This document shows, in pieces, positions 11,373 through 37,713 of a stretch of DNA of 64,000 nt; positions within the stretch are counted from its first letter, which is position 1; every line of letters begins with the position of its first letter. The stretch is from Magallana gigas (lineage: Eukaryota). The DNA is taken from assembly GCF_963853765.1 (NCBI RefSeq), contig NC_088855.1, positions 28,210,001-28,274,000 of the forward strand, read 5' to 3'. Below the pieces are notes generated by a model. The model was given only the letters and a program-made list of their open reading frames with translations, searched no databases and was not told the DNA's origin. Both the position numbers and the translations under genes were made by a program.

Positions 11373-11378
<6 letters not shown>

Positions 11379-14912: not shown

Positions 14913-17900
14913 TCACTTGGATGCTGGTATTTTGGCCTTGCCTTTATTCCGCTTTCCTCTGTTCTTTTTCTTCCTCTTTGTGGTTTTATTTTGTGATGTA
15001 AAATTAAACTTGAAATCTGCAAAAATCAACAAAACTTTCATAAAAAGTATTTGTAAAAAAAAACAACAATCCAACAATACTGATGAAATCCACATCAAAT
15101 GAATTCATTTTTATGGTGGAGGCTGCATTTTTAGTTTCAAGTAATAAATGAGAAAATAGAGTAACTTGTTTCATCACAAAAAACTAAGGGCTAAGATTAG
15201 GACAGTCACAAGTTTTCAATATATATAAATACAATTTAAGATAAAAGACACTTTATTATGTCCAAATGAATTAAATATTCAAAAATTTAATAAATTTTAA
15301 TAAAAATTCAAAAATGAATAAAAAAATTCAAAACCCCTTTTTAAAAAAAAAGGGGCGAAGATTAATTAAGACATTCACAAGTTTTCAAAATATATAAATA
15401 CAATTTAAGAAAAAAGACACTTTATTATGTCCAAATGAATTTAAAAAAAATGTTTAATCACTTCAGTCAATTTAATATATTTAATAATTGATTTCCTCCT
15501 TATTAAATTTATTTTTTCATAACCCCCCACCCCAGAATATTCGAAATGATTCCAAAAGTAATAAAAGGACAATTCAAAATTTTTTTGACTACCAAGGTTT
15601 GATTAATGTAAGTGGACATCAATTTCCATAATTTGAGTGCAATTCACAGTTTTAATGATCGATACGTAAATTTGTGGCGACCAATCTTATCAATACAATA
15701 TGTTATTAGAAATAGCACTTCGATAAACATTTAAGTTCATGGATCAAGCCAAGAGCAAAAAAAAAAAAAAAAAGGATTCAATTGAAACCCCAGTATTTCT
15801 TCGAAATCTCTTCTCAGCATGGTCTCATAACAAGGATTGTGACAGGAACAAGAGGTTTCTTCAAAACTCACCAGATGGGTCAAAGGTCAATGGGATTCGA
15901 CCATTCAGTGTGTGATAAGGGATCATTATGGCGGGATCCAGTGGAATCCATGGAACTTTCATCTTGTCAAAGTCGGGATCCGCAAAGCCAAGCTGCTGAA
16001 AGTGCAGATCATAGGAGCCTCTGGTAAAAAACAAAACAAAAAAAAGGTCAAATTTCTATCCTAATTTCGATTTAGTATAAAACCAAGCTATAAAAGACTC
16101 ATGAATTCAATTATCTTCAGTATAATGATGAAGTTAGATAAACAAATATAGTCTTGGAGCAATAAAACTTTGGGTTGGTATAATTATCTTCCTTTCTTGG
16201 AGATGTACCTTTTATGACCCTCTGTCGCTTTCTTTATGACGCATTTATCTGAGAATTTTTTGTGAGCAAGGAGATATTGACCAGGAGACAACCTACAGAG
16301 CAAAAAGGTCAAAAGTTAATGTGTTTATGTGTAATTCAGGTAGTAAATTCTCAAAGTTAAAAAACAAAGTAAAAAAAACCCTTCACCTTGATTAGCAATG
16401 ATCCAGACTCAACATTGGATAATTTAAGACATGAGTGTCTATATATAGGCTCATTAGCCTACACAGTCAAACCTCATTGTTGATCGGATCTTGAAGATAA
16501 CCAAGGATCGAGATATCAATGTTAAAATTAATATTAAGCAGTGGTTAACCGTTAAGACATTCAACTAACTTCAACATATCAATATCATATCAAATACTCT
16601 GACATTAGAAATACATAAGTTTGGTTGAATTTTTTGAAATCAGAGAGAAAAACAGAGTAATTGAAGCAAGAGGCCCACTGACACTGACCGTCACCCGTGT
16701 ACCATGGTCCATAGATGATAGACCTGTCATGGAGGTCATGTTAGCATTTTAAAATTCATTTTTGAGTCAACACCCTAAACCAAGACTCCTCTGACTGTTA
16801 ATCATTGCAAGCTTTTAATAATTGATGTTTCCAAACATCAAACAAAAGGGGGTGGGGTGGGGGAAAAGTTGGAGGAACCTTGGATTATCTATACCAAAGC
16901 TCCATGGGCCAAAAATTGTAAACTCTTTATAAAAGTACATGTGCAGAAAAAAACATTTTAATATTAAATTAATACACTTTCACTATGTGGCCATATTGGC
17001 CAAACCCAAATGTGTGTACCCCTGACCAAAGGGTCAAGAATGTCACAATTTAGGACAGTATGGACATCATAACCATGCATTCCGTCTATGGCTATGTTGG
17101 CCCCACCTTAAGGCCTAAACCTCTGACCAAGGGACCTTGAATTTCACAGTTTAAGTCGAGGGCTTCATGAAAATCATAACCATTCAAATTGTCTCCCCTA
17201 CTGTGGAGGTAGAGAAAAAGATTTTTCTAAAATTTCTGACATTTTCACTATTTGGCCATATTGGGCCAGTCTTAGGGCCTAAACCCTTTACCCAAAAGCC
17301 ACGAATGTTAATTAAAATTTTGGTGAAGGCTTTATGAAAATCATAACCATGCATTTAGTATTTCTAAAATTTATATGGGTAGAAAATAAGATTTTCTCAG
17401 ATTTAATACATGTTCATTAAATGGCCATATTTGCACCCCTGGGGTCTGAACCCCTGACCCAGGGACCACAAATTACATATTAATCTTATTTTCGTACAGA
17501 GCTTTATGATCATTATAACCATGTACATAGTTTTTTTCTCACGTGTGAGATTAGAGAAGAAGATTTTTTAAAATTTATCCTTTTTTTTGCAAGCTTGCCC
17601 CCATCCATAAAGATAATTTCAAAATTGAGATTTCTCTTGTTCTAGAGATGCTTCAAACAAAAAATGGTTAAAAATTGTAAACAGACGATGCACGGCACAG
17701 ATTGACAAACGACACCAAAGGCAGTAGGTCAATTAAGTGATGTAAATTACCTAAATAAAAGAATGAATTACTGAGTAATACATACCAGTACTAGTAGCAA
17801 AGTTTAACCAAACATAACTTCTTATAAGATCAAGGCTGCCTTTGTCCTAGCAGTTATTCTGTCTATTCTTACGTTGTACATACTACATTGTACATGTACT

Positions 17901-20900
17901 GTCATAATTTATGCTTCCAAAAAAGTTAATACTTCTTATTCAAGCACTCATGGCAATCTTACAAGAGATACTCTTAGTAGATGTATACTAGTATAACATT
18001 TCAAAGGTCACCAGTTTGCAGAGTAAATGTATGTATAAAATGAATCTGATACCATCAATGAAATATCAGGTTTTTCAGAACATTGTAGTTTTCTGAGTAA
18101 TGATGAACAATTGTAATGGAAATACAGGTAACCCTTGGATTTTTTTAACTAAGTTCACAAACTTTGTAACTCAATTCTGTACAAAAGAAAACTGACAATG
18201 GTTGATAAGCAGCACAACCACCCAATGGCGAAATGAATACCGGTACCACTTACTGGTGGAGATGGTGGAATATATTTTGCAGCATCAGGAATGCTTTTCC
18301 AGGGCTAGCATGAAGAAAAAAGTAGATTCAATACATGTACATGCATATAGAAACCATGAAAAATATTCAATCGTACCTCTATTATGTAATTTTAATAGGA
18401 TGACCACATAGACTTTGATTTGGCATTCCTCACCTAAAGCTCTGTGTTGGAGGTATAAGCTGGGCTGCTTGCAATTCTTCTAGAGACACTAACTCTGTCC
18501 TCTGTGTGTGGAATCTGGCTGGTAAATAAAATGCAAACATGGTAGATTATTAATATACCTGTATGTAACATAATGCTCTTACAGTAGTAAATGTATACCA
18601 TGTTCCACAAATACATTTTAATTGTGCATCAGTCATAAGAATTTCACTAAAAAAAAGCAAACACATTAATTCCATCTAAAATCCATGAATTTGAATGATT
18701 CAGTGTTAGATAATACAATATGATGCAGGTGGCTTACCTCTCAGGACTCGACAGCTGGGTCTGATGTAGGAGGAGATCCAGGTTCTCGCTGTCTCGCTGG
18801 CCGTAACTTGCTCCATTCCAAATTGACACTGGTACTCCAGCTTTGGAATCAGGTGAATGAAGGACAACTGTCGGATGGATCAAGAAACAAAGATTGCACA
18901 CAATTGCAAATCATGGCAATTGTTTTTAATTCAAACTGTTCATAACAAAAAAGGAATAAATACTTAATCATACAAATTAATATGCATGAAAGCCAATGTC
19001 ATCGTTCTCATCAACTAGATAGTGTAACCAAACAAGCACTCATGGCTCCATGTTTGTAAATGCATCAGTTTTCTTCATAATCATATAATAGTTCTTAAAT
19101 ACTTGAATTTTTCTGATAAGAAGTAGGGTGGAAGGTGCTATTATATCAAGTATGCCTACAATACCTGCTGATTGAGGTCTCGTATAACTCCGTGAATGTT
19201 GCATCGCACAATGACCTTGAACCCTCCTAAATCCCAAAGGTTATAGGTCACGTTGTTGCGCATTGGAAACTTGAAGATGTGATCAACATTTTCAACCGGA
19301 TTTGCAGGAATATTTTGTTCTATGAAAACGAAAAAAAATATTATCACAACTACCGGTACTGAACATCAGACTCTAAAGAATCCAACGATATGAAATTGTG
19401 AATCTCAGTCCGAATCAAATGCAAGATTCCTTTAGGTAAGGTGAACATGAAAGTCTATGTGAACAATTTAAATACATGTATGCAGATAACTGTCACATAC
19501 CTTCACTGGATTTCAGAAGCTTCTGCTGTACACTAAGAATGTTATCTAAAGAGAACTCGTCCTCAGTTTTGTTGGTGGGTTTTGAGGCTTTCTTACCACC
19601 TCTTGCTTTGACATCCGATTGCTGAGAAAACTCTGGATTTGAAGCTGGTACCATTGTCTGTTTTCCTACATGACTAACTCTTCTCTGGGGTCCAATTTTG
19701 CCCAAAATATTTTCTTTGAAAAAAAAAAATTGGAAAAAAAATTAATCAAACAAAGTAAATTTTCATCTATTAAGATTTTTTATTTGAAAATGACAAAATT
19801 CCAGATCCATTGCTTCATTCTTTAAACCTCTCACCAGTATCTAAAGACCTCATTCTATTTGTCCCCACAGCTGAAGTTTCAGCAGAAACCTTTAAGGCCT
19901 GTTTATCATTCTCAGCAACCTGACTCTTGACAGCTTTCAAGTTTTCCTTCACTGATTTGGCAGCTGCCGTGTTGATTTCATTGAACACCTCTGTCTCTGA
20001 CTTCCTTTTTCTTCTTCCTCTTGTCTGCATCTCTTTCTCGGATGTCTCGTCTTCAGAAGTGCCACCCACCGATGATTTGGATCTGGTTGTCATTCGACAT
20101 GGAGGCACCACTTTTCCCATACTTTCATTTTCCTTTGGTTCAACAGATTCTGGCATTGGATTTTTTCTAGGTCTTCCTCTTCTTTTTTTCACTGGTTCTA
20201 CCAACTTCTTTTTGGCCTCTTTAATATCATCCTCACTTTCAGATGTAATAACATCCTTTTTACATTTCCTCTTCTTTGCAATAACTTCGCTATCAGAATT
20301 CTCCTCTTTTCCTTCAATGGGTGCACTTTCCATTTTACAAGCAAAATTTGTATTCTGATCACTTTCTGCACTCAATGATTCTAAACTCTGACTGGGGCTC
20401 TTGTGTCGATTCGATCTCCTTAATGGGGTACCATAAGGTTTATCAAACCCACCATCAGATCCCAGATTCACCTGTTTTAAAGTTTGTACCTGACTTGAGA
20501 GGTCCCCACTTTCATCCTCACTCTCCCTACACAGAGGAATAATGGGACAAGGAAAAGCCTCAGTAATGCCGGATACCCCTCCTTTCTCTGGGCTTGCAGG
20601 AGATTCCTGTTTCCTGGGCGGACTCTGGACCGAGTCCGATGCATAGTCCGATCCTATGGGGATGATCTTGCAGACCTCCATGTCACTGATATCTGGCTCG
20701 GGACTAGCAGGAGAAGGGCTGGCTGGAGCGTCCTCTATCACCTCCATCTTCTTTGTAGGGGACTCCATGATGTATAGCTTGTCCTCTTCATCCTCACTGC
20801 TGTCCTCCTCGCTCTTTATTGCCACACTCCTCGCTTGGAGTCGTCTCGATTTTCTGGGGGATACTGATGATTTTTTATTTTCATTTATTGGTTCCGGTGT

Positions 20901-23900
20901 TCGCCAAGGAATTGTAAGAAGTTCACTTTTCTCCAAAACAACAGTTTTATTCTCTTCAAGTCTCTGAGAAAATTCATTTCCTGCACTTGTATCAATATTT
21001 TTAATTGCATTTCCCTCAATATTGTTTGCATTTTCTTTGGCTTCTGTAATCACAATTACTTCACAACCTTCACATGTTTTCTTATCAATATCATTGTCAC
21101 TGAAAAGCTGAGAATCAGTCTCCTGAAATCCTTCTTGAAAATCAGATGTTATTTCACAAGAATCTGTCTTCACTTCTTTTGTTTCTAACTCTGGCTGAGT
21201 TACAGGTTGAATTTCACTTACTCCTTTTGGAGTTTTGTGCATTTCCCTGATTTTTCTCAGCAAGTCTTGATCGGAGTCAAAAGACTTTCCTTTGTCTTCA
21301 AATTTCTTATGTTTAATTGCACTCACAGAATCCAGTTCATTCTTCATCTGCGATTGAGAATCCTCACCGGTATCCAACATTGGGGTCTGCTTGTGTTTGG
21401 AAAGCGAATTCAATTTTTTCTTAGCAGTTCCAAAGCACTCAAGATCCTCCAATGAAACATCTTCTGTACAGAATGGCTCTTCTTTCTTTACAGCACCATT
21501 CTTACTCCTCTTTTTACCTGCAGTCCTTTTGGAGCTGCCACATTCATTGCTACCAGCACTTTGTGGAGTGACTTGAGGTGTTGATTTGAAAGTTCTCTCC
21601 TGTGTTTCTGAATCGTCTAATTTACTAAACACAAGTCCCTTCTGTAATGGCTTTGCAATGAAGGACTTCAAAACAGTTTTGAAATATTTTGTGTTCTTTT
21701 CTTTAGGTGTAAGCTGTGGTGGTAGAAATGGTCTGTCAATGAAAACCACTCGGTGCACAGTTACCTTATCACCCTCTAGAAAAAAAAATCCAAATTTACA
21801 TCATTAAAAAGGTGGGATAGGTTCATGAATAGAAAAATAAGATGAACATGTACCTATCTAAAACCTTTCACCCCTAAATAATCAAAGAGCGGCTGTTCTG
21901 AGAATAGAAAACTGAGAAAGTAGCCTATGAACTTTGACCCTTTCTGACCTTTGAGTGGGAAGTCCTTGACAGTGATTGGCATCTCCCAATGTTCTAGGTG
22001 TTTAGGTGCATGGTTGTCCACCAGACACTGGAGAGCTCCGGAGGATATAACAATATGAGCTCTGTTCTCTACAGCCAAGTGCTCAGCATTTTGGTCAATA
22101 CTGCAGGGCTATATAGTTGGACACAGTAGAGTAATTTTGTTTTGTTTGTTATTGTGATATACATGTACATGTATGAAAAAACCCTAAACAACATGTATAT
22201 TTGAAGTTTTTTATGAATATATATGATTACATGTACATGTTCCTGAATAATTGTGAGAAGAACTAAATTACAATTTTTCATCGATAAAACCGAAAAATAC
22301 ACTTGTATACATGTTCATGTACAAAGAATCACATATAAAGAAGAATAAAATTACCGTAAACAGAACCTCAGAGAAGCAAGTCTGGCAATTTCGTTCAAAT
22401 TACATAATTATTGAAAAAAAATTCTTCTTCACATACTTCAATACATGAACCAACCTCATGATTCCAGGCACTTGGTTTGCAATTTCTATTTTTAGACACT
22501 GGGTACTGCTGATTGACAGCTGGAGAATCCAATGGTAGCTCTGGCTTTAGCTGCTGATTCACAGTGGGCAGGATCATCTTTGGCACCACCCCCTTTAAAA
22601 TGACAAACAACAAAATTCCAAGAAATTCTACTAAAATTCAAGGAGAGTAAACCAAAATCAACTTCACGTGTACATTTACCCTTGATCTTTTAAGGCATAA
22701 AATTGGAGAAAAAGAAGACACAAAACGCAGTATCATGTTTCTAAGATTAGATTTTGGGAGTAGAGATTGACTTACCAACTGAAGAAGCGGTTTAATGTAT
22801 ACCATCTTTGGAAGGGAGCCTTCACCATCAATTTCGAAGGATTTTTCTGCATTGTAGTATTTTGGATACAACTCTGCTTCCTTTTTCCTGCTCTGAATGT
22901 AGTCCTAAACAGACAAAAAGCATGATGGTCAAAAATTTGATAAAGGAAATACATGTATAACAAGCAAATACTGATGCCAAAAAGGCATTATTTTTCATAC
23001 ATACACCTATTTATTAATAAATATTTTTTTTTTTTGGCAAACACACTTGAATATGAGATGTAAACTTCTAGTTCAACAAATATTTACAAATACATTTTTC
23101 ATCAATACCAAGTAACTTGTTCTGCAATATCTTTAATAATTACTCTGGGATTTCACTTATTTTATTTTATACGTACCTCCATGTAACTCCTGGCTGCCGG
23201 GTGCATGTATGTGTAGTCTGTCTTGTGACAGGTGTTGGCAAGTGTTTCTTGGAACTGCTGAAATTCTGCCTGCTCCTCTAGAACCTCCTTTGTCAGAAGC
23301 TTTCAGGGAAATAAAATGAGTATCGCTCATGATAGGCTTATTGGTACAAAATTTTTATCTCTGTTCACTGCCCAAAAATATTATTGCATATTGGCCAAGC
23401 ATTCAATGACATCACCAATTTGAAGATACCATCCAAACAAGATTGAAGAAAAGTCTACTAGGTGATATTATTTATTCAAACAATTGATATATCACCTATT
23501 TCATTTGAATTTAAGGAAGTAATGTCACCTTTTTTAGTTGTTGATTTTGTGATAAATGTATCATGTACTCAGATACATGTAGGTGATATCATCACCTTGA
23601 TTTCACATATAGTACCATGTAATTTTACATATATTCAAAAAAATAATGTCTCTAATTATCCTTTTTATGGAAGTTATCAAGTTTTAAGTACACTTTTTCC
23701 CCTCTTCTGATTTACATGTAAGCATCTTATCATTGCAACAGTGAAATTCAATTTTCTGTTTTCAAATGCACCTAAAAAATTCAAGAATGTATGTACATAA
23801 TGTTAATATGAACTGTTGAGGATTATTTTTGAAGTGTGTAAACATCCTATAAAAATAAATGTACTTTAATACCTGGAGTTCCCTCATCTCCATTCTTTCC

Positions 23901-25266
23901 TCTTCAGTTGTATCAATTGTAGTCTTGTGGGAGTATTTTCTGTAGAGGTACACATAACGTTTCTGCTGATCATGTGAGAATCTGGACTTCCTAGGTGGTG
24001 CAATCTTTTTCACCAAAGGTGGCTCTACTCTCTTTTTTCTGAAATAATTATTTTCAACTTCAATTTATCTGTTATGCTTGATATACACTGTATATTTTTT
24101 TTACTGTAATTGGAATTTTTTCCTCTCTAAAACTCATCCAAAAAATCCCTTATTATGAACACACTGCATCTGAAAATTAATTGGCATGGGGATCTTTAAT
24201 TAATTTTACAATTAGCTTGCGATTCATTGCTATTACTAATTAGATGCAGGACTTAAACTTTCTTATGATTGAATATGTGATTTTTCCAGCTCATGTGTGT
24301 TTTTAAGACATTTATTACAATACTATATTTTAAAACATTGATTGCACATACATGTATGATTGCATGACTTTGATTAGTTGTAAACATATTTGCAATAATA
24401 ATAACTCATATGCGATCATTATACAAGCTATAAAGCAATTATAAGCAGCGAGAAAGGGATGAAAGTCAAAGATATATTTATCTGTTAATTCTCATTGTTT
24501 GATTTTGACAAAAAAAACTTTCTTTTTTTTAAAGTACCTTAAAACATGCTTATAACGAAGTGTCAGGGACGGGCAATTTTACTTTGTTATAAGTGTTATT
24601 CATTATACATGTACCTGTCAAGTTTACAACATGTAATAAAGTCACAGGGAATGAAAATCACTTCACTGTACGTGTCATTTCATTATAAGCCTGTTCACTA
24701 TAACCATGTTTTACTGCAAATCATGCATACATACTGTTTCCCTTGGGCTTCTGGAGCATTCTTTGTCTTAGAATTTGCTTTCTCCTTTTGTTCATCTATT
24801 TTCCCCTTTGGTTTGGTGGGCTTGTCAGACAATTTTTTACCCATAGCTACTGTACCATCTGCAGATTCTGGTGGTTCAAACCTTTAAAAATGATGAAAAG
24901 ATAAAACACTATGTCATGCAAGACTGACCTCTGTGTGAACTGTGTAACTCTATATATATAATTTTTCCTGATAGTTAATGTAACATCTGACTAAATATTT
25001 AATACAGTGGTCCCTGTGTTACCTACTGGTTTAAACCATTACACTATTATTTTCCTGCAATGTCTTTTGGAACATGCAATTAATTATCCTTTCCACTTCA
25101 TTTAAATTACAATAATTCTTAATTAAATTAAGCCCTAAACTTGTGCAAGACAGCATTGAATTATTCATTAACCTGGCATCTGAAGCAGTTTCACTCTGCC
25201 TGTGTGTGACACTGGGACAGACAGGTTCTCCCTTCATCTGTCTGATTCTCATTAACAGTCTCTCTT
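14913..25266 (-). CDS. ICE2: Little elongation complex subunit 2 (ICE2/NARG2), 3' part: exon 2b 25266-25173, then 24881-24735, 24038-23873, 23299-23177, 22904-22776, 22592-22437, 22108-21948, 21775-19835, 19713-19501, 19319-19165, 18867-18738, 18518-18434, 18304-18254, 16292-16209, 16020-15872, 15016-14913
   Basis: In-phase GT-AG exons. Motifs match ICE2 as recalled: PRKSRFSHDQQKRYV; HIVISSGALQCLVDNHAPKHLEHWEMPI; NVTYNLWDLGGFKVIVRC; LIPKLEYQCQFGMEQVTASE; GQYLLAH; KVPWIPLDPAIMIPYHTLNGRIPLTF (NARG2_C-like). Confidence 0.9.
16664..17757 (+). mobile_element. HINE-like element with ~100-170-bp degenerate satellite units, in an ICE2 intron
   Basis: AAGAGGCCC start; repeated GGCCATATTGGCC..ACCCCTGACC..CATAACCATGC units near 16985, 17085, 17250 and 17420; GAC tract near the end. 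Boundaries approximate. Confidence 0.65.
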
Positions 25267-25460
25267 AGATATGGCAAGAAATTAGGACTGCGTTTTAAGG
25301 TAGTAGTTTTGTACCCAAGGGTACACCACTATATAAAACATGTGTTAAAAGTTACAAACAGGGTACACTATATATTTCTACTAAAACTGAAAGTAGGGGA
25401 GTCGGGAAGGATTTTAGAGAATCAACTTTAAATAGCTATAGAAAAGGTTACAACTCAATT

Positions 25461-26122
25461 AGAAAGTGATACAAGGGTTTAGAAGTCTATATTTTAGTCT
25501 AAGTTAAAAAATCAAATATATGAGCTGATGGAAAGGGTACAGTGGGTACAAAGGGTACACTTGGATACGGGTAGGTTACAACACTATTAGAAAGTGATAC
25601 TAAAAGTCTATATTTTAGTCTAAGTTAAAAAATCAAATATATGAGCTGATGGAAAGGGTACAGTGGGTACAAAGGGTACACTTGGATACGGGTAGGTTAC
25701 AACACTATTAGAAAGTGATACAAGGGTTAAGAAGTCTATATTTTAGTCTAAGTTAAAAAATCAAATATATGAGCTGATGGAAAGGGTACAGTGGGTACAA
25801 AGGGTACACTTGGATACGGGTAGGTTACAACACTATTAGAAAGTGATACTAAAAGTCTATATTTTAGTCTAAGTTAAAAAATCAAATATATGAGCTGATG
25901 GAAAGGGTACAGTGGGTACAAAGGGTACACTTGGATACGGGTAGGTTACAACACTATTAGAAAGTGATACTAAAAGTCTATATTTTAGTCTAAGTTAAAA
26001 AATCAAATATATGAGCTGATGGAAAGGGTACAGTGGGTACAAAGGGTACACTTGGATACGGGTAGGTTACAACACTATTAGAAAGTGATACAAGGGTTAA
26101 GAAGTCTATATTTTAGTCTAAG
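25461..26122. repeat. Subterminal tandem repeat: 5 full units (128,121,128,121,121 bp) plus a partial unit
   Basis: Units start at 25461, 25589, 25710, 25838, 25959 and 26080; near-identical; each has three GGGTACA motifs. Confidence 0.95.
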
Positions 26123-26766
26123 ACACAGCTTTCTTCTTCAGGATCTATAAAATTAATTTTGAAATTCTGTTACTATTTGGATTGTAATGTTTCAGATTCA
26201 CACCGCACTTACCACTACGGAACAATTTGATACTGCGGGCGTTAAATTTATTCTAATTAATAAAAAATCAATTGTAAAAATTGGCCTGACATTCTGTCCT
26301 AATTTGGGAGTTTATTTCCAAGCAACATCCTTCTCAGATATTTCAATGGAACTTTTTCAAGTGAATAACCTAATAATGTTTCCTCACGTCAAGGTGCATT
26401 TGTAATCACATTACGTGTATTGCATTTTATGCTGTATTGGATGGAGAAGGCTTATAAAGGCAATGCCTCTTTAGAGTAATGCTTCAGTAAATCCAACAAT
26501 GTCAAACCAATTTAATTAACTTAATTCAGAAACCACCCGTGCATTTTTTTAAGCAAGGAAAAGAAACAAGATAATTTACCTTTAAAAATGTTATATTTAT
26601 CATACTCTTATTTTACACAACAACCTAGCCATCTAAAAAGTTTGTGCATGTGAAATTTTTTCATTATTATGCTGCAAAAGTTACATACATTTAAAGGTGG
26701 CACTAAAGGGAGATAACTCATACAATCTTAATATATTTAGCAGAGCATTATGAGTGCATTTCTTAC

Positions 26767-29559
26767 CATGAGATGACTGCGATTCAGTGATTGAATCTGT
26801 CATTTCACAATCAGCAATGGTTTGATCATCTATGTTGTCATCATTGGAAAAGTTGGTGCCTGAAATAGATATATCATTGTTGTATAAAGTTTAAGTACCA
26901 ACTAGCCCTGGTAGTTGGTTTTTATTTCAGTAAAAATGTATTAAACAAGCTATTACAAAAAAATTTGGACACTGAGTATACAAGCATAAAAAATTAACCA
27001 AAAGTATGGTTCTTTATATATACGGTATTAAGCATTGTATCATCATAATAGGTTAATTCCCGCTCTTGTGCGATATATCATCTAAGACTATACGTATTCT
27101 GCACATAAATATTAGCTTCATTTTATTCAGTTTAAAATATTTGCAGTTAAGAGAATAAAAATAGGAATACAAAATCTTGTAAAATTATTGAAATGAATTC
27201 CCCATTTTATGGCTGCAAATAAATATGTATCTCTTCCCAGTTCTCAGACAAAAGGAATTATGCAAATCAATTTTAAATGCATATTGCATATCAATACCTG
27301 AAGTCTTTAAATCAGTCTTCTCAGATGTCAACATGTAGTCTCTCCAAGCATGAAACTTTTGAGTTCTGGGATGGTTTTCCGAGTAAACAGCATTGAAGAT
27401 TTCTGCAAAGGCTTGGTGCGAAACAAATCCATGGTTGCTACAATAAGAATACAATGATGAAATATTTTAAAGTATGATGCATTTACATTCAGTCCATAAG
27501 CAACAATATGTTTCGGGATGTTGTAGTATTGGAATATAGAAACATGAAATTCTTTTGTTACTCATGCGGGATATTAAGGTGGCGCAGCATTGATTGCAGG
27601 CGAAAAAAAAATATATAACCTGAGTTTAATTGTTTTTGTGCAATCATCACTACCGTCATAACCCGTATAAATCAAGTAAAATTAACTAAATTACTGTTGA
27701 CGTACATTAGTATGTGAATTTGTTTGATATCCCCAATCAATATTTTTTTGTGCAGTGTGGTTTTTCTTAGGTCGATAAAGTTAATTAAGATTATCAATAA
27801 ACGATGTGTGTAGATGAGTTACAATAAGTAAAATTCCATAAGAAAAAAAAGGAATCATAGTTGGTGAATGTAAATATAGTTTTAATGAAAACCCATGATT
27901 TGAGATGTAACACTTTTCTTGAAATTCCTAGCAGTCACTTTACTACACTATTTTTCCTTATCATATATCTGTATTATATCTTTAATTGTCTGGTTAATAT
28001 GTTTATAATACTTTTCATAATAATTCATTGGAATCTGCTTCCTGTGGGTGAAATGTTATCATTATCACTAAAAGGGGTTTACATGCAGTCCTCCTATCAA
28101 TTGATTAAATCTTATTTTCTTCAAGACCACAAGCAGTCAAGTATATGAGATATGACTGTATGCATGTACCGGTATATCTATATCGATTTCTTTTGGTTAT
28201 TCCTGTTTTTATTTTTTTATTTTTTTCATTTCACCTTATTTTTTTTCTTCACATTTCCCTACTCACTTCTCGTGTATATTTAAATTATATCTAATCAGTG
28301 AAGTAGTTTATTTGTACAAAAATGAACATAAGTTTAGGAAAGCAAAATTATGAATTCAGGAATCTCAAAATATCCCAACACAGAGGGTCACAAGATGGTG
28401 AATGTAATATGTCTCAGTCAATATTGTTTAATATCACAATAGCTAAATGAATAATTTAAGCCTTTATATATACTTGCATATGTTAACCAAAGATCACAAA
28501 CTTAAAATCCACTTGGGGCTTTTGTTCATATTTACTGAATTAAATTTTAAAAATCATATTATCCCCCCCCCCCCCACATTGCTTTCTTTTTTGCCTATAT
28601 TGGACTTCTATACTTTAATGCATAAGGCTTTCTTTCATTACAAGTAATTTTTGCTGACTAGAATAACTATTACAATCTGTCTGTATAGTAACCCCATGAC
28701 ACCCGATCAAAATCTGTGAGACTCATAAACCCACAATTAAATTTTAAAATGCAAAATTTATTATCATAGAATTCTAATTACCTAGATTCACATAGGAACT
28801 CGTGCAGGTCCTTGCTCCAAAAGACTCTGTTACTTGCACTTTTCCACTGGCTGGCACTTGGTAGCGAATAAAATGCTTTTCCTCGATTTGGTGAAGAGTA
28901 TCCATCCACATGGTAATACATTTGACACGATTTGCATTTTAAAACACCTCTTTGGCCTGGAATGGGTCCACTCAAGGTGTACAGGGTGACTGCAACTCTG
29001 GCAAAGGAATACAGAGTCTCTTCACACTGCAGACATTCAGTCACTGGGGGGTTGATGAAAGCTAAATAGGGTTCCTTGTGGAGCCAGGTAGCTTGCCACA
29101 ACAGTGATGAAATGTCTGCTGGGTTGTCCTTGTGGAAGGTCATCAGATTTGGGCAACACGGAAGAATTCGCAGAAAGTGCAACAAAGATTCCGGCTTTGT
29201 TGATGCAAAGAGTGGAGAGGCCTTGCAAATGTTCCTTATGATGACATTCCTGTCTGGAAAATTCTCTGGCACGTGGTTGACGACTGCACAGAGGGTAGCC
29301 ATCTGGGCAACGGATAGGCACAGGGAAAGAAGGTTTACAGTGTCCTCCTCATTCTCCAAGGGTAGAATGTTTAGATGTTCTTCTGCGTCCATTTTCAATC
29401 TATGGATGTTTGCCACAAGTTTGTCTGCTTCCTCCTTTTGGTTGATCAGCACCTCTATTCTTTTGGATGGTGTGTCTGGATCTTTGTTTAAAAGTCTTTT
29501 AGTCTTTGAAGGAGTTCTTGTGCCCACATCTTTAAGGGTGCGCCGTTTCCGAGGGGTAT
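26767..29559 (-). CDS. Partial CxC5-domain protein of a KDZ-type transposase; exons 29559-28781, 27437-27298, 26859-26767
   Basis: Three open, in-phase GT-AG exons: PPVTECLQC..VTLYTLSGP..LKCKSCQMYYHVDGY..FY..SNRVFWSKDL..VSHQAFAEIFN, matching the CxC5 pattern as recalled. Start exon and catalytic exons not found. Confidence 0.75.
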
Positions 29560-30322
29560 CTAAATAGAAATAATAAAAGGTGTAATATTAGTACCGGGAC
29601 ATGAGTTTTAAAGGAAGAGTCATTTCAAAAGTTTGACTTGTTTCTTTTTCAATGTGTTAATTTCTTTTGATCAAATTATTAGGTGACTGAAAGGAACAGA
29701 AAGAGGTTACCCGTACTTTTACCTTTAGTTTAATATTAGGCATTGAAAGTAAAATAAGGTCATTTGAAATGATTGACAAAATGACAGAAGTCAAAACCAA
29801 TAGAAAATTGAATTTTTCTTTTGTAATTATTATGTGTCTTATAAGCCCCGATCATCATGCTTTAAAAATATGTCATATATTTAATACAATAATAGTGCTG
29901 TAATTTTAGTATTAATATTTCGATCATAACATGTATTACACAACATTCATAAAGGGTCTTTTTGAAATCAATATCAATTTGTGCAGGTTTTCTAGTGAAG
30001 GAATAGAAGTAAATTATGCAATTTTTGAACATTTTTGTGATGAGACAAATCCTTTAATTTGCACTTTTATAGATATTGAAGGAAAACCCCCATAAATGAC
30101 TAGATCTCTTTGCCAAATAGTTGCTTACAAATAGAACATGGTTGAGTATTGTTGATGTTGATGTTGTATGTATATTTGAAATATATGACCGGGAATTATA
30201 ATAGCTAGGTAAAATTACAATAGGTATAATAATAATCATTATAATATTATTTATACATTTATAGTAACTAGTAATAATTAGAAAAAAAAAAGAAACGAGA
30301 TGTTTGTGAAACACTTATACCC

Positions 30323-30748
30323 CCCCTCCCTTGGAAACATCTACCAAGAAAATGAACAGAAACTGCAAATAATTGAATTTTTTTAAGTCAAAGGGGCACA
30401 ACTCTGTTGAAAATAGCTCGAATGTACCCAAAATTGAACTTGACCTAGGTATTATTATAATAAATGTGTTTCATTTCAATACCTGCAACTTTTGTGAAGA
30501 AAATGAACAAAAACTGCAAATAAGTGGAATTTTACTAAGTCCAAGGGGCATAACTCTATTGAAAATTGCTCGATCATACCCAAAGTCCAATTTGACCTAG
30601 ATATTTTTATATTAATTGTGTATACCAAATTTTATTTCAATACTTGCAACCTCTGTGAAGAAAATGAATGGAAACTATTGGTGGACGGACAGACAGACGG
30701 ACAGCAGCCAAGCAATATGCCCTCCCTTCATCGAAGGGGGTATAAAAA
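30323..30748 (+). mobile_element. HINE-like element nested in the KDZ-like element
   Basis: Two to three ~160-bp units (GAAAATGAAC..AAGGGGCATAACTCT..TTGACCTAG), GGACGGACAGACAGACGGAC tract and 3' hairpin CCCTTC-ATC-GAAGGG. Confidence 0.75.
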
Positions 30749-31009
30749 TACAAACAAAAGGTTTTATACACAGGTTCAGATTCTGTGGTATAGGACAATA
30801 AGAAGGACTAAATAGATTATTGTATAATAATTTCTCTTTGTTGATTGAATATATTCATGAAAATATTTAAATATTGCAATATTTTTATCATAAGTAAGAC
30901 TAATGTCACCATTTAGAATGAGTTGTACTGAAAAAGGTATTGGCAGTCTTAAGGAATCTATGTTTTTGGATTAGTAAAAGTCTTTGATCACATGCAGTAT
31001 TTTGGACAT

Positions 31010-31600
31010 TCAATAAAAAAAGTGAGAACATGTTTCATAATTGTTTCCACATATGTCACAACTTGGGTTGTCACTCAGAAAATGATAATATAAATCAGCA
31101 AATAAATTACTAGCTGAGTTACGAAGTTGACAATGGATTATATTTTCCTTTCGAACACCATAGTTAAAGTACTTCTTGGATTTGGAACAATACATATTTT
31201 TTATGGCATGGGTAAAAGATGACAGTGTTGAAAGACTTTTCATGCATGTACATTGTAATAGGTTGTTTTAGCTAGGGGGACTTGAATTGTAAGGTTGTTC
31301 TGATTTCTTAGGGGATAGGATTTTAGGTAATCATTGTCCAATCAGATCAACTAAATATTCGAGTTGCTAATCCATAAACTATCTTATAAAAATAACACAA
31401 GCTCATGTATTTTACGTCAAACTTCGAGTGTATCCCAACCAAGTTCAATTTGACTTTAATCCTAAAATAATTATAGCTGCTGCAACTGCAAAATCTTCAA
31501 GTAGTTTAGCATCTCTATCAGAACAATTATCCCATACAATGTCAGAATATTCAAGAACTGGGCAACAAAGGCAAAGTAAATTTTTATCAAGGCATCCCTT
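31010..31600 (-). mobile_element. Degenerate 3' fragment of a CR1/L2-type LINE ORF2
   Basis: Minus-strand PVLEYSDIVWDNCS..KLLED (~31470-31580) and HCQLRNSASNL..SCDICG..ETCSHFF (31010-31243). Confidence 0.65.
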
Positions 31601-31859
31601 TTAAGGGTGTGTTTCAACATTTTTAAGATATTTAAACAAGTACAGGCTTTAGAATGAATATCAAGAATATGTGTCCTCCAACTACCACCCTGCTGGAATT
31701 TTATATCTAGATGAGTATGTGTTTCAACATTTTCAATAGCAGGCCCATCAGTACCAAATTTAACTTTGGGATTACTAAGTAAACACTCCTTCTACCAAAA
31801 TCTAAATTACCGGTAACTGTTTTATAGGGATTAATTTCAACCGCCACTTAATGAATTTG

Positions 31860-33770
31860 CAGATTTCAAATATTATTATCATATATCTACTATAATATAC
31901 AAAGGGTGATGCATTAGACCCCAATAATTATAGAGGCATTAGTCTTTTCAGTTGCTTTGGTAAATTATTCACATCTATTTTGAATCAAAGATTGTTAACA
32001 TCATGGTCTGTCGCAAATGATGTAATCACTGATGCAGTTTGGATTTCAACCCATTTAACGAGGCACAGCTGAGGCTATATTTAGCCTTTCAAATATTATT
32101 AATATGTCAATAAGAAAGAAAAAGAAGATTGTATTGTTGACTTTAAGAAAGCAATTGAGACAATTGAAAGATTGAAATTATGGGAAAAATTGTCTAACGT
32201 TGCATGGTATTAGAGGAAAATTGTTGAATTTTATTCGTAGTATGTATAATAATATGAAATCATGTGTTAATTCAGCAGGAAAGTTATCTGAGTTTTTTTT
32301 AAAAATAACACAGGACTTTTGCAGGGAGAAGTGCTATCTCCAATATTGTTTTCATTATATGTGGATGATTTTGAAATGGAATTTTTGTGCAAAGGTAACA
32401 TACCATTGATACAAATTCAAGAGTTAAATCTTTTTGTTTTAATGTACGCAGATGACATGGTAATTTTCTCCGAAACTGCACATGATCTTCAAGAAAAGTT
32501 AAATACATTGTATTCTTATACATCTGTCTGGGATCTTACTGTAAATGTACAAAAAACCAAAATTGTCATTTTTAGAAATGGTGGTAAAACTCACAATAAT
32601 GAGAGGTGGCATTTAAATGGCGAGCCAATTGAGGTTGTCAATAGCTTTATATACCTGGGCCTTTTGTTACAATACAATGGAAAGTTTAACAATACACAGA
32701 AACAGTTGGCGGGCCAAGGGAGAAAAGCCATGTTTTCTTTAAAGTCAAAAACAAGTCAATTGTATCTGAATACAGAAACAATGCTGTCAATTTTTGATAT
32801 TTATATTGCTAGTATATTAAATTATGGCTGTGAGATATGGGGCATGCATGCTGCAAATGATATAGAAAAAGTGCATTTAGAATATATAAAATTTGTGTTA
32901 GTGTGAAGAAGAATTCAAACACTGCACTTGTATATTTTGAAACTGGGAGGCTACCTATGAAAACTATACGAATGTTTAGAATATTCAAATTTTGGTTCAA
33001 ATTGTTACAAAGTCAGAATTGTATTTTGCAGTCCTGTTACAAAATGCTGTATAATGAGTGTGAATCGTCTTTGGCACCTGCTGAAAATTGGGTTACTGTA
33101 ATTAAGAATAAACTTTTTGAAATAGGTCTAGGACATATATGGTTTGAACAGAAGTATATACATTTTGCAACCTATTTTCCTTTAATTAAGCAAAGAATCA
33201 TTGATCACTTTACTCAACAACTTGTAGAACAGATTAATTCCTCATCTCGATGTTATTTTTACAATCATATTAAAGACCAGTTTTCATTACAATATTATTT
33301 AACAAAATCAATACCTTCTACATATAAGAAACAAATTACAAGAATTAGATTGTCATTTTATAGACGTTCAATTGAAAGTGGACGACACACTTAATAGTAC
33401 CAAAAGAAAGACGCTTATGTAAATTTTGTTCAGATATTGAAGATGAATTCCATTTTGTTTTGACATGTGAAATCCGAGTAAAATATATTAAGAAATATTA
33501 TTGGAAAAAACCTTCTGTATACAAATTTATACAATTATTAAGTGTTCAAAATTTTAAAGAACTGTGTAATTTCGGGAAGTATCTCCATCTAGCTTTCAAT
33601 ATTCATGATAATTAAGAAAAATTTCTCTGGTTTTTTCGCCTGTTAGTAAAATTTTATTTTATATACATTGTCAATGTACTTTACATGTACATGTACCATT
33701 ATTTCAATAGTGCTATTATTTATATGTAATAACCTATGCCATAAGATGTATGTCTTGTGCAAATTAGGTT
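31860..33770 (+). mobile_element. 5'-truncated, frameshifted non-LTR retrotransposon reverse transcriptase (RTE-X/CR1-like group)
   Basis: DPNNYRGISLFSCFGKLFTSILNQRL; QGEVLSPILFSLYVDD; YADDMVIF; KTKIVIFRNGG; FIYLG; ILNYGCEIWG; C-terminal IEDEFHFVL. Split across ORFs by frameshifts and stops. Confidence 0.85.
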
Positions 33771-33789
33771 ACTGCATTGTCTCTGAACA

Positions 33790-34250
33790 TGAAGTGGATA
33801 ATTATCCATAAACTACCTTTCACATCAACAAAAAGCTGTATAAGCTTCAATGTTTCCAATACAGAATAATAATTAATATTAAGATTTTAGCAACAGACAT
33901 TTAATATTCAAATCGAAAATATGTACTTTTTGTCACAGAGAAGAGGAAACTATAGAACATATCTGTGGGATTGAAATCTATCATCCAGTTCCTATTCTCT
34001 GTAAATGAATGTATATTGTATAATTTATCTTAATAGAAGAATAAAAAATTCATATGCATTTTAATTTACCGAAACTTTGTAATATAATGGACATCCTAAA
34101 TAGTTTAAATACCATTTTTCTTTGGTAAAATACTATTTTTACACAGCAAGTTAATTATATTAGTATTTCTTCTGCAATGTTATCTTTATAAACACTCTTC
34201 AGAACCCATGAAACACAAAAATTATTTTTTATAAAAATGGAGAAAATGTA
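33790..34250 (+). mobile_element. Highly decayed L1/Tx1-like ORF2 3' fragment
   Basis: Broken motifs KLPFTST..FQYRII..ILAT..CTFC..EETIEH resemble the zf-RVT region. Confidence 0.45.
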
Positions 34251-34496
34251 AATAATCAAATTTGTATTTAAATGATGATATGATAGGATATTACATTGTT
34301 TGACAATTGTATTTTTTCTCTCAATCTTATTCATCTAAAAAAGATTCAATTTTTTTAATTTGTTCAAAACCAGGAACAAGCAATTAATAGATGTACATTG
34401 TATTTACTGTGTAAATTGCAAGGTGTTAGACATATTTTACAGCTCTCATATATGCTCAAAAGATTCCTTCCTCAAAGACAGTCTTTTGTCTAATTT

Positions 34497-34975
34497 CTCA
34501 TGTGTATGGTCTACCTGTATAATTCTTATATATTCTAATATGTTATTTGCAAGGCTCAAAGTTTCACACCTTTCTTTGTTATACAAACTTCAAAGACATA
34601 CTTGGACAACACCTGCATATGTATAATGTGTGTGTATTTTAAGAGGAGACATGCTTCAAAGGAAAATTTTGGGCTATTTTCTCATGTGTATGGTCTACCT
34701 GTATAATTCTTATATATTCTAATATGTTATTTGCAAGGCTCAAAGTTTCACACCTTTCTTTGTTATACAAACATCAAAGACATTCTGTAGACAACACCTG
34801 CATATGTATAATGTGTGTGTATTTTAAGAGGAGACATGCTTCAAAGGAAAATGTTGGGCTATTTTCTCATGTGTATGGTCTACCTGTATTATTCTTATAT
34901 TTTTATGTTATTTGCAAGGCTCAAAGTTTCACACCTTTCTTTGTTATACAAACTTCAAAGACATATTGTTTACAC
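34497..34975. repeat. ~184-185-bp tandem repeat, ~2.6 copies
   Basis: CTCATGTGTATGGTCTACCTGTAT recurs at 34497, 34681 and 34866. Confidence 0.9.
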
Positions 34976-37144
34976 CTTCACCTGCAGATAGATTATTTCA
35001 ATTACCCTCTGGTGTAGATAAGCAAAGAACCAAGAAATCTACAATGCATTTTTTTTTTTGATATTTGATTTTTTTTAGAGACAAATTAATTAAACTTTAG
35101 AGAATAATTAAGGTAGCCCACAACATTTAAATGCTTTGTTATAATTTTTTGATGACGCAACATTACTAGATGACAAATTAATGCTTTATGAAATTACTAA
35201 TGTCAAACCATTTTTTTTAATGAAATGCTCAGGGTTCCTTATAGACTGTGTTCTGATCATCAACAGATCGAGTTAGCCCTCTAAGGATTTTGTTAAAATT
35301 AAATGAATTAAATTTGTGGTAGTCATTTTTTTTTTCAGAAAAGAATTCCTTATTTTTAACATAGATTACATATACTTTTTATGCATCAATCTCCCCCAAC
35401 AAAGTCACCTAGCCCATATAATACTTTCTTAGATCTATTGCAGTAGGATTAATATAAATATCAACAAAAAACTGTCTAACACAAGTAGCAGCAAACGATT
35501 CCAATTAAATTTTTTATCTATCTATTGCGAAATCTTCCCTCTGTACTGATACAATTAGAGCAAACTGTTTTGATTAGAATTTGAATCTAATTGTAATATA
35601 AGTGCTATTACTCTTTGAAATATAATGAAATTTTCATTCCAATATTGTATGTCCTTGTGAATGGGGTATGAATTTAATTAGAAACCAAATGTTTAATACT
35701 TAATTTAGGAGAGTTGCAGTTCTGTTACCTTTAATTCATTTAAAGCAATATGAGCTGCAATTTTCAGGCTGAATTTTTTTTTTTACAAAAATTTCTACTG
35801 AAATGACAAAAATATCATGGCCGGATTTTAAGTTTCTGTTAGCATTTGTGGGAAAAGCCGTTAAGAAGCCTTACTTGAAGCATAATTGAATTATTGTTGT
35901 CCTGTACAAAAATTTAACTGCTATAAATTCCTTAGAAGATTAATCATTCTTCAGACAAAAATTAATGATTTTTTTCAAATCTTATTTATCATACAAGTAT
36001 AAATTACATACAGACTAAACATACTAGTGGTTTTTGCAGCAAAATAAATTTCTAGAGAATACAGCTTATATATTGCTTTAAGTTTCAGTACACTATTTTT
36101 TGAATTAAATTGATCTATACAAAACCTTACAAATCTAAATATAATATGGTCATAACATGGACGTATATACGTCCCTGGTCATAACTAAAACAAAGTACAC
36201 AAGCATTATAAGGTTAAACTTAGTTTGTACAGCATAATTTCATCTTTCCCCTAAAATCAAATTTTGATTATTAATTGCTTGTTTCCACAAAAATCAATTT
36301 TTTGATTATTAATTGCTTGTAAAATTAGTAATAAAAACTAGAAAGGGTTATTTTTATAAATAATTTCTATTTTGTTGGAAAAATAATTACAACATGTATA
36401 TAAGGATAAAATTAACGATTTCCATAATTAAGCACTATTTATTTTTATCAAAAAATCTTTTTTCAAACTAATCAAATCATTTTGATCAATGCTGAGAAGA
36501 GAAATCTAATTTTTTTCTGACAAAAATTTATGAATGTTTCAAGTCTTATTTGCATGTGAGACTTAGCATATTTTGCAGCAAGATAACAGTCTAAAAAATA
36601 CAGTTCATATTGATTTTAAAATTAACAATATGAATTATACTTTAATATTGCTATTTGTTCAATAGTCTTTAAACTGCAACTGTTATAAACCTCCAGCAAG
36701 CTTCAACACAATAAATCAATTAAATAAATTAAATTGAAATGGCTAGCAAACTCATATCTAAGCAAACTTACCCATTCTGATACAAATCCAGTTAAATCAC
36801 AATATAAACAACAGTTAGCAGCTTAAAACAACAGGTAGCATTCAGTAGGAACTATCATCTAAGACAAAGTGACAGGTAGGCTAGATGAGGTTATTGACAG
36901 GTGAGGTATCTAGTGGGAGTGTACTTGACTTTCCATTAGCCAATGAGAATCGATTATTGTGTAACCATTGTACCCTCTGTATCACGTGACCCTAGAGTAT
37001 CCTGGGTAATTTTCTACTTTCATTTTCCTATGGTTTTGTACTGTACCCTTTTTGTAACCCCTTTCTTCTATATAATATAGGAGGTGTACCCTAGGGTACA
37101 AAAGTATCACCTCAAAACAAAGTCCTAATTTCTTGCCATATATG

Positions 37145-37713
37145 GTCTCTCTTCCAGTGTGGAGGGAATCCCCGAGTATTTATTGAAGGATTCCTCACTG
37201 AAGAAGCAGTCAATGCCATTTATTGGCTTCTTATTGCTGAAATAAATAGGTAAAATATAAAATATATGTATATTTAACAATACAAGTATTTACTTAATTG
37301 TTTATGAAATTCAATCATCTTTAAACTTCAAGTCAACATCATGTTTAGTGCTGTGATGGTAGTGAAAGGAGGGGGTAATATATGTGCATAGATCTGTTAA
37401 TAACTGATGCCGATTGAAACGACGTATACTTCTGATGGCGTATAACTGTGATATGCTATAAAATACATAACACTAGAACTGACATGGGGAAACTCTGTTA
37501 AAAACACTTATTTTCAGTTTGAATTACGTTCACCAGTTTACCACTGTTACAACTTAAAAATCATTAAAATGCTCAACCTACTTTCAGTTAAGTAATACAT
37601 TAATGGTCGATGAAGTGTTAACCAATCATATAATATGCTTCTTTTGAGCAAATGTGAATACACAAGGAACTGTAAAATTAAACACGATACCTCCAACTAA
37701 TTTTTGTGTCCAT
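37145..37713 (-). CDS. ICE2: ICE2 5' part: exon 1 (37713-37691, MDTKISW) and exon 2a (37236-37145)
   Basis: ATG, AG|GTATCG donor and TTTCAG| acceptor. Translates MDTKISWSNKKPINGIDCFFSEESFNKYSGIPSTLEER, resembling the ICE2 N-terminal NG..FFS.E.. motif, and joins in frame to LLMRIRQ across the TSD. Confidence 0.85.

What the first reader, a model, noticed from the sequence alone, without database searches (positions are those of the whole stretch)
25258..37153. An 11.9-kb transposon splits coding exon 2 of an otherwise intact ICE2 gene
Seen: GTCTCTCTT is duplicated exactly on both sides of a TIR-bounded element. Deleting the element and one copy gives ..GIPSTLEER|LLMRIRQMKGEP in frame. With the element present, translation runs EER-PYMARN-stop (44 aa in total). 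The other 16 exons are open with canonical splice sites. Established: ICE2 is a little elongation complex subunit needed for Pol II snRNA transcription. Inference: this is a very recent insertion creating a probable null allele on the assembled haplotype, a candidate recessive deleterious allele of the kind underlying high genetic load in oysters. The clean TSD argues against a misassembly.
Basis: partly seen in the sequence, partly recalled or inferred. Interest (0 to 1): 0.9.

Follow-up and report, generated by a model that had tools for sequence, protein, structure and literature searches.

The report
Transposon-split ICE2 gene in oyster reference
On the assembled Pacific oyster chromosome, an 11.9-kb cut-and-paste transposon sits inside a conserved coding exon of the single-copy ICE2 gene; uninterrupted copies of the site occur in other public oyster data, so this is an ordinary but well-documented segregating gene-disrupting insertion.

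Summary
An 11,879-bp TIR-bounded element (25266-37144) splits exon 2 of a minus-strand ICE2 gene. Translation into it stops after 44 residues. The other exons thread 100% onto the 1,324-aa Magallana gigas ICE2 protein XP_065935196.1, and all 16 true introns are GT-AG.

One correction: the target-site duplication is 8 bp (GTCTCTCT), not 9. Seven other family copies have 8-bp duplications, and every copy starts with the T.

The element is a non-autonomous KDZ/Zisupton-type transposon. It keeps a CxC5 exon but lacks about 19.6 kb of a 31.4-kb parent-like copy on contig C9, including that copy's KDZ-like exon.

The insertion is not fixed. Seven contigs from other public runs join the two flanks with a single duplication copy, and one is identical across exon 2. 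Contigs of two more runs pass through the junction into sequence that is not the element. The probable source run breaks exactly at the junction, which suggests heterozygosity.

The assembly holds no paralogue. RefSeq's full-length model lies on this chromosome and skips the element as a non-canonical intron.

"Null" and "deleterious" remain untested. Exon 2 is 177 nt, so skipping it would stay in frame. This is a new member of a known kind, of modest interest.

The parts
25258..25265 (.). Left copy of the 8-bp target-site duplication GTCTCTCT
   Evidence: Seven other family copies show 8-bp TSDs.
37145..37152 (.). Right copy of the 8-bp target-site duplication. Base 37153 (T) matches the element's first base by coincidence.
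25266..37144 (-). Non-autonomous KDZ/Zisupton-type DNA transposon, 11,879 bp. It looks like an internal-deletion derivative of the 31.4-kb copy at G000:C9:1911301-1942745. Its transposase-gene remnant runs in the same direction as ICE2.
   Evidence: Identity to C9a is 98.5-99.1% over element positions 857-11879.
25266..25327 (.). Left terminal inverted repeat (TAGATATGGCAAGAAATTAGGACT...)
   Evidence: I1: 59 nt, 88% complementary
37083..37144 (.). Right terminal inverted repeat (...AGTCCTAATTTCTTGCCATATATG)
25359..26122 (.). Subterminal tandem array of 121-128-bp units. The arrays are longer in copies C9a and C10.
28781..29587 (-). Open frame of 269 aa carrying a CxC5 cysteine cluster (the domain associated with KDZ transposases). 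It is a retained 5' exon of the transposase gene.
   Evidence: PF18718, E 5e-8, 33.5 bits against a cut-off of 26.9; the identical ORF is in C9a.
32319..33394 (+). Nested reverse-transcriptase (retrotransposon) fragment inside the element, also present in the C9a copy
   Evidence: RVT_1, E 1e-14
37125..37127 (-). Premature stop codon reached 6 codons into the element (…EER-PYMARN-stop; 44-aa product)
37691..37713 (-). ICE2 coding exon 1 (ATG at 37713; MDTKISW + 2 nt)
37145..37236 (-). ICE2 exon 2, 5' part (residues 8-38). It has an acceptor but has lost its donor.
25173..25265 (-). ICE2 exon 2, 3' part (including the second TSD copy). Intact exon 2 would be 177 nt, i.e. 59 codons.
14913..24881 (-). 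ICE2 coding exons 3-17: 24881-24735, 24038-23873, 23299-23177, 22904-22776, 22592-22455, 22108-21949, 21775-19835, 19713-19501, 19319-19165, 18867-18738, 18518-18434, 18304-18254, 16292-16209, 16020-15872, and 15016-14913 including the TGA stop. All are open and all introns are GT-AG. The NARG2_C domain lies in exons 11-16.

Best explanation
A non-autonomous cut-and-paste transposon of the KDZ (Kyakuja-Dileera-Zisupton) group, most like Zisupton, has inserted into coding exon 2 of the single-copy ICE2 gene on the assembled haplotype of Magallana gigas chromosome contig C3. ICE2 (little elongation complex subunit 2, also called NARG2) is a subunit of the complex that drives Pol II snRNA transcription. 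The element is 11,879 bp with about 60-nt TIRs, subterminal tandem repeats and an 8-bp TSD. It carries only the 5' (CxC5) part of a transposase gene, so it must have been moved in trans by a full-length relative such as the 31.4-kb copy on contig C9 (inferred). Insertion duplicated GTCTCTCT within codons 37-39, inside the most conserved N-terminal block of ICE2. Read straight through, the mRNA stops 6 codons into the element, giving a 44-aa product and, by established rules, a target for nonsense-mediated decay (inferred). The insertion is a segregating allele, not a fixed feature: uninterrupted sites are present in several other public runs, and the likely source individual appears heterozygous. 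The RefSeq protein XP_065935196.1, annotated on this same chromosome, can be obtained only by skipping the element plus one TSD copy as an 11,887-bp intron without GT-AG ends. It therefore reflects the empty allele rather than what this haplotype can encode by normal splicing.
For: Structure: TSD, TIRs and frame. Family: at least 9 further copies in the genome, 7 of them with 8-bp TSDs. Derivation: the window copy is 98.5-99.1% identical to C9a over its internal 11 kb but lacks about 19.6 kb, including the KDZ-like exon. Classification: CxC5 scores above the Pfam cut-off. The C9a exon gives a weak KDZ hit (E 0.005) and scores 0.97/0.96 against KDZ clusters in the Atlas. Zisupton makes 8-bp TSDs (PMC12730594). 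Gene: NARG2_C hits; P0025 threads 100% with GT-AG introns, while the element gap has no GT-AG option. The contig on record for P0025 is 61,039,741 bp, the length of C3. The N-terminal block is conserved from oysters to abalone. Single copy. Empty allele: contigs L047-L053 from 7 runs join 37145/6 to 25266 with one TSD copy. L050 is 100% identical across exon 2 and 99.8% / 97.1% identical in the flanks. X9 and X10 flank contigs run through 37145 into 125-126 nt unlike the element. The X2 flank contig starts exactly at 37145.
Against: No read or contig crossing the filled junction was shown directly. Only Logan contigs were available, the listed ones stop 31 nt short of the junction, and the loose-end letters of the X9 and X10 contigs were not printed. 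The species of the runs holding the empty site is not given, and several contigs are only 85-95% identical in the introns, so some may come from sister species. The KDZ catalytic domain is absent from this copy and only weakly detected in the parent copy. That the transcript is degraded or the protein lost is not tested. That C9a encodes a working transposase is not shown; its frames are short exons and no full gene model was built.
Confidence: 0.85

Rival explanations
1. The insertion allele is not null. With exon 2 split by 11.9 kb, the spliceosome skips both halves and joins exon 1 to exon 3. Because exon 2 is 177 nt this stays in frame, giving an ICE2 that lacks residues 8-66 and is partly or fully functional. 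A hypomorphic or neutral allele of this kind would add little to genetic load.
For: Exon 2 is 83 + 9 + 85 = 177 nt (59 codons). Exon 1 ends in phase 2 and exon 3 begins in the matching phase. The NARG2_C domain lies far downstream in exons 11-16.
Against: The skipped segment holds the most conserved N-terminal block of the protein. P12, G15, F19, F20, E22 and S24 are invariant across bivalves and abalone, which suggests the block is needed. No RNA evidence was obtained for or against skipping.
Confidence: 0.25
2. The element is an assembly artefact: a repeat copy wrongly placed in the ICE2 exon during assembly.
For: No junction-spanning read was displayed. Near-identical copies exist elsewhere in the genome. 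No junction-specific ORF products are on record in other assemblies.
Against: The element is complete, with both TIRs and an exact 8-bp duplication of the target, as in 7 other copies. A misjoin would not create that. Its internal structure is a unique deletion derivative, not a copy of any other locus in the assembly. In the probable source run the flank contig ends exactly at the TSD, as expected when filled and empty alleles branch there.
Confidence: 0.03
3. The RefSeq model is literally right: the element is removed from the pre-mRNA (or excised somatically) precisely enough to give normal ICE2 from this haplotype.
For: XP_065935196.1 is annotated on this chromosome and equals the element-free reading exactly.
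Against: None of the 10 possible gap placements has GT-AG or another standard splice pair. Empty-allele DNA exists in other individuals and would give RNA-seq reads that an annotation pipeline aligns as a gap. Precise excision with loss of exactly one TSD copy is not the usual outcome of cut-and-paste excision (established knowledge).
Confidence: 0.03
4. The element belongs to another superfamily with 8-9-bp duplications (hAT, or Mutator as a 9-bp TSD would suggest), and the CxC5 exon is a passenger.
For: hAT elements also make 8-bp TSDs. The KDZ Pfam hit in the parent copy is below the cut-off.
Against: The family TSD is 8 bp, not 9. No hAT or MULE domain was found in any frame scanned. The CxC5 and KDZ-like exons lie on the same strand in C9a, and the same pair recurs 13 kb apart in a 34-56%-identical relative on contig C8. 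The Atlas places the exon with KDZ clusters.
Confidence: 0.05

Closest known systems
Zisupton / KDZ (Kyakuja-Dileera-Zisupton) DNA transposons
   Same: 8-bp TSDs with TIRs, as stated for Zisupton in PMC12730594. A CxC-type cysteine cluster lies upstream of a KDZ-like transposase exon in the parent copy. KDZ domains are reported as enriched in C. gigas (PMC10546077).
   Different: This copy lacks the catalytic part and is non-autonomous. The parent copy is unusually long (31.4 kb) with many short exons and nested retroelement fragments. Its KDZ match is weak (17 bits), and placement within KDZ (Zisupton versus Dileera) was not resolved by a tree.
Exonic transposon-insertion loss-of-function alleles segregating in outbred populations, as invoked for the high genetic load of oysters
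   Same: A polymorphic insertion in a coding exon of a conserved single-copy gene, with a premature stop. It is present on one haplotype and absent from others.
   Different: No fitness, segregation or expression data were obtained here. In-frame exon skipping could soften the effect.
ICE2/NARG2, subunit of the little elongation complex (ELL, EAF, ICE1, ICE2, ZC3H8) for Pol II snRNA transcription
   Same: A NARG2_C domain at the C-terminus. Orthologous to proteins annotated as ICE2 in Ostrea, Saccostrea, Crassostrea, Pinctada, scallops and abalone. Single copy.
   Different: The oyster protein (1,324 aa) carries one 647-codon, poorly conserved central exon. Its role in the complex has not been tested in molluscs.

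Membership tests
ICE2 / NARG2 (little elongation complex subunit 2) | C-terminal NARG2_C domain (PF10505) | tested here: met
   Exon-level hits: 43.9 bits at 18736-18873 and 31.8 bits at 15864-16055, against a cut-off of 30.8. PF10505 is precomputed for P0025, which threads 100% onto the window.
ICE2 / NARG2 (little elongation complex subunit 2) | Collinear orthology with proteins annotated as ICE2 in related species | tested here: met
   tblastn of O. edulis P0015 and P. imbricata P0012 hits the exons in order. P0015 hit list.
ICE2 / NARG2 (little elongation complex subunit 2) | Physical membership of the little elongation complex and a role in snRNA transcription | not testable with these tools
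   Rests on established work in human and Drosophila cells; no mollusc data.
KDZ / Zisupton DNA transposons | 8-bp target-site duplication | tested here: met
   The window copy and 7 other copies have 8-bp TSDs. Zisupton makes 8-bp TSDs (PMC12730594).
KDZ / Zisupton DNA transposons | Terminal inverted repeats | tested here: met
   59-nt TIRs, 88% complementary. The termini are conserved in all copies.
KDZ / Zisupton DNA transposons | KDZ transposase domain (PF18758) encoded by the element | tested here: inconclusive
   Absent from the window copy: not detected in the frames scanned, and the only family match to the KDZ-like exon is in C9a. In the parent-like C9a copy, one 177-aa exon scores 17 bits, E 0.005, below the 26.6-bit cut-off. 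The Atlas feature search puts it with KDZ clusters at 0.97/0.96.
KDZ / Zisupton DNA transposons | CxC cysteine-cluster domain associated with KDZ transposases | tested here: met
   PF18718 CxC5, 33.5 bits against a cut-off of 26.9, at 28781-29587 on the minus strand.
Mutator-like elements (suggested by a 9-bp TSD) | 9-11-bp TSD and a MULE transposase | tested here: not met
   The family TSD is 8 bp. No MULE domain in the scanned frames.
hAT | 8-bp TSD together with a hAT transposase / dimerisation domain | tested here: not met
   The TSD length fits, but no hAT domain was found in any scanned frame of the window copy or C9a. Only the longer open frames were scanned.

The most novel reading that the evidence does not exclude
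A KDZ/Zisupton family is currently active in Magallana gigas. A single 31-kb master copy would mobilise deletion derivatives into coding exons, producing segregating knock-outs of conserved single-copy genes such as ICE2. That would give a concrete molecular source for part of the oyster's large recessive load. Reference annotation hides such alleles by modelling the element as an intron.
Probability: 0.3. Interest if true: 0.5.

Novelty: new member of a known kind. Interest (0 to 1): 0.33.

Why it matters
There are three practical points.

1. The reference chromosome carries a disrupted allele of a conserved single-copy transcription-machinery gene, while the public protein model on that chromosome reads as intact. 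Anyone using the assembly for variant-effect calls, guide design or haplotype work at this locus should know this.

2. The site is a ready-made marker: filled and empty junction sequences are known to the base. It can be used to test in families whether homozygotes are missing, which is the kind of direct test oyster genetic-load studies need.

3. It documents a young KDZ/Zisupton-type family in an animal genome, with 8-bp TSDs, near-identical copies and one candidate autonomous copy.

None of this is surprising in kind. Polymorphic transposon insertions are common in oysters.

Tried and rejected
- **Filled-allele lookups.** Exact-product lookups of three short ORFs that exist only in the filled allele (51, 41 and 35 aa) found nothing. 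This is weak evidence, because short ORFs are rarely called and records of this genome are withheld.
- **P0025 contigs.** The link to this assembly was made through the contig length instead.
- **Own-genome KDZ search.** A whole-genome Pfam KDZ search found only unrelated loci on C4 and C1. It missed the family's own weak exon.
- **Fragment hits.** The representative search with the 661-aa exon returned mostly exon-sized Logan fragments. P0033 turned out to be exon 9, not the insertion site.
- **CxC5 relatives.** Relatives of the CxC5 frame were only short, unnamed oyster proteins.
- **Read laying.** Only Logan contigs were available for the DNA runs I chose. Filled-junction reads, loose-end letters and RNA splicing were therefore not seen.
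- **Earlier notes.** Notes of this scan on this genome held nothing on this locus or family.
- **9-bp TSD / Mutator reading.** Rejected.
Full report
**Observation**

The 9-mer GTCTCTCTT occurs only twice in the window, at 25258-25266 and 37145-37153. Between the two copies lies an element whose ends form a 59-nt inverted repeat, 88% complementary (25269-25327 / 37083-37141). A 121-128-bp tandem array lies under the left end (25359-26122).

On the minus strand, removing the element and one repeat copy gives ...KKPINGIDCFFSEESFNKYSGIPSTLEER|LLMRIRQMKGEPVCPS... in one frame. With the element present, the frame reads EER-PYMARN-stop.

**Correction: the duplication is 8 bp**

The genome (G000, 564 Mb; the window is C3:28210001-28274000) holds at least nine further copies of the family. 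I read the flanks of eight paired copies. Seven have a duplication of exactly 8 bp: CGCGCGGG, AAAAAAAG, GATTTTTT, GTACACGT, CTAAAGAC, TTTAGCTC and AACACACC. In all eight the base before AGATATGG is T, whatever follows the right-hand duplication.

The element therefore starts with that T (25266) and ends at 37144, a length of 11,879 bp. The TSD is GTCTCTCT, and the ninth matching base is a coincidence. The predicted empty-site sequence is unaffected.

**What the element is**

- Its only sizeable frame with a family match is 28781-29587 on the minus strand. This frame carries the CxC5 cysteine cluster that Pfam associates with KDZ transposases (33.5 bits, cut-off 26.9).
- Reverse-transcriptase fragments at 32319-33394 are nested debris.
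- From element position 857 to the right end, the window copy is 98.5-99.1% identical to positions 20277-31445 of a 31,445-bp copy at C9:1911301-1942745. That copy has its own 8-bp TSD.
- The window copy lacks about 19.6 kb of that copy. The missing part includes a 177-aa frame with the motif pattern of the KDZ transposase C-terminus. Pfam KDZ scores it at E 0.005, 17 bits, below the cut-off. The Atlas feature search scores 0.97 and 0.96 against KDZ clusters, and 82 of 100 hits are KDZ.
- Within the family that frame exists only in the C9 copy. A 56%-identical relative lies on C8, next to a 34%-identical CxC5 frame on the same strand.
- Zisupton, the characterised member of KDZ, makes 8-bp TSDs and has TIRs (PMC12730594). 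KDZ domains are reported as enriched in C. gigas (PMC10546077).

I conclude that this is a non-autonomous KDZ/Zisupton-type element, moved in trans. Trans-mobilisation is inferred, and the catalytic-domain evidence is weak.

**The gene**

- NARG2_C (PF10505) matches minus-strand exons at 19159-19365, 18736-18873 and 15864-16055, and nowhere else in the genome.
- A search with the O. edulis orthologue returned P0025, 'little elongation complex subunit 2 [Magallana gigas]' (XP_065935196.1, 1,324 aa).
- Every residue of P0025 is matched exactly by 17 coding exons of the window. Each of the 16 real introns has one GT-AG solution.
- The 11,887-bp gap that removes the element and one TSD copy has ten equivalent placements, and none has standard splice ends.
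- The contig on record for P0025 is 61,039,741 bp, exactly the length of C3. RefSeq's full-length protein is therefore annotated on this very chromosome and treats the element as an intron.
- All matches of P0025 in the genome lie at this locus, and the empty-site sequence is absent from the assembly. There is no paralogue and no second haplotig.

**Where the insertion falls in the protein**

The insertion lies in codon 39. This is inside the best-conserved N-terminal block, PxxGxxxFFxExS...LEERLL, which is shared by oysters, pearl oyster, scallops and abalone.

**Is it polymorphic?**

A search with the downstream half-exon frame found Logan-derived ORFs that read straight through the site (…GIPSTLEERLLMRIRQ…, flanked by intron-encoded residues, so they come from genomic DNA). 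I fetched seven such contigs from seven runs. Each aligns to window 37145/6 and upward on one side and to 25266 and downward on the other. The two alignments overlap by 8-9 nt, which is one TSD copy.

L050 is identical to the predicted empty site across all of exon 2, and 99.8% / 97.1% identical in the flanks. It is an element-free version of essentially the same haplotype. The other contigs are 85-98% identical in the introns, and some may come from sister species. Those show the ancestral state.

**Evidence from laid contigs**

Only contigs were available for the four DNA runs I laid on 35000-40500.

- In X9 and X10, from two other studies, the flank contig runs through 37145 and continues for 125-126 nt that do not fit the element. 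This is as expected for the empty allele, but the letters were not printed.
- In X2, one of the two best holders (share 0.96) and probably the source sample, the flank contig starts exactly at 37145. Its depth is about twice that of the neighbouring haplotype-specific contig. The element contig ends at 37113.
- With 31-mers, a homozygous insertion would let the flank contig reach about 30 nt into the element. A break exactly at the TSD is what a filled/empty branch gives. I read this as heterozygosity, as an inference only.

I did not see a read across the filled junction. Look-ups of three junction-specific ORF products found nothing, which is weak evidence.

**Consequence**

Read-through gives a 44-aa peptide and, by established rules, a transcript subject to nonsense-mediated decay. 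This is inferred, not tested.

One specific alternative deserves weight. Exon 2 is 177 nt, so joining exon 1 to exon 3 keeps the frame and deletes residues 8-66. Because that segment is the conserved N-terminal block, I still favour strong loss of function, but 'null' is not established. The fitness effect and any link to genetic load are untested.

**Verdict**

This is a real, segregating, exon-disrupting insertion of a young KDZ/Zisupton-type element in single-copy ICE2 on the reference haplotype, and the public annotation masks it. In kind it is a familiar event in a highly polymorphic, transposon-rich genome, so interest is modest. Its value is as a precisely defined marker for load studies and as a pointer to a recently mobile KDZ family.

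Noticed in passing
window 41443-44751 (minus strand): A NECAP-like gene (PF07933-type N-terminus, 88-100% identical to the front of O. edulis P0016) lies directly upstream of ICE2. O. edulis isoform X2 and both Saccostrea 'ICE2-like' models (P0016, P0023, P0024) are NECAP-ICE2 fusions that join at ICE2 exon 2. These are either conserved read-through transcripts or a recurrent annotation artefact.
   Followed up: partly
G000:C9:1911301-1942745 (L037-L040): A 31.4-kb copy of the family with its own 8-bp TSD (AAAAAAAG). It is the only copy with the KDZ-like exon (L038:8430-8960, minus strand). It also carries a frame with a Walker-A-like motif (GPPTAGKT, L038:259-609, minus strand) that has no significant Pfam match. 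This is the candidate autonomous master.
   Followed up: partly
Read-laying run X9, window 35964-37113: X9 holds a 1,150-nt contig identical to the window copy's right end. Neither other near-identical copy in this assembly (C10 at 99.3%, C9a at 98.8%) is identical there, and X9 seems to lack the ICE2 insertion. An identical sister or donor copy may sit at a locus not represented in this assembly.
   Followed up: no
G000:C8:1247307-1261196: A related element or gene: a CxC5-type frame (34% identical) and a KDZ-like frame (56% identical) on the same strand, 13 kb apart.
   Followed up: no
window 24617-24716 (ICE2 intron 3): An interspersed repeat of about 100 bp with over 1,000 first-look candidates genome-wide at 88-93% identity, probably a MITE or SINE.
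   Followed up: no
G000:C5:57018120-57019503 and G000:C3:23091717-23092088: Very short derivatives of the same family (about 1.4 kb and about 0.37 kb). The first has an 8-bp TSD (AACACACC), so the family also exists as MITE-like copies.
   Followed up: partly
window 8400-10644 (minus strand): Long open frames downstream of ICE2 that look like a coiled-coil / NHL-repeat (TRIM-like) gene. Judged by eye from the translations only.
   Followed up: no
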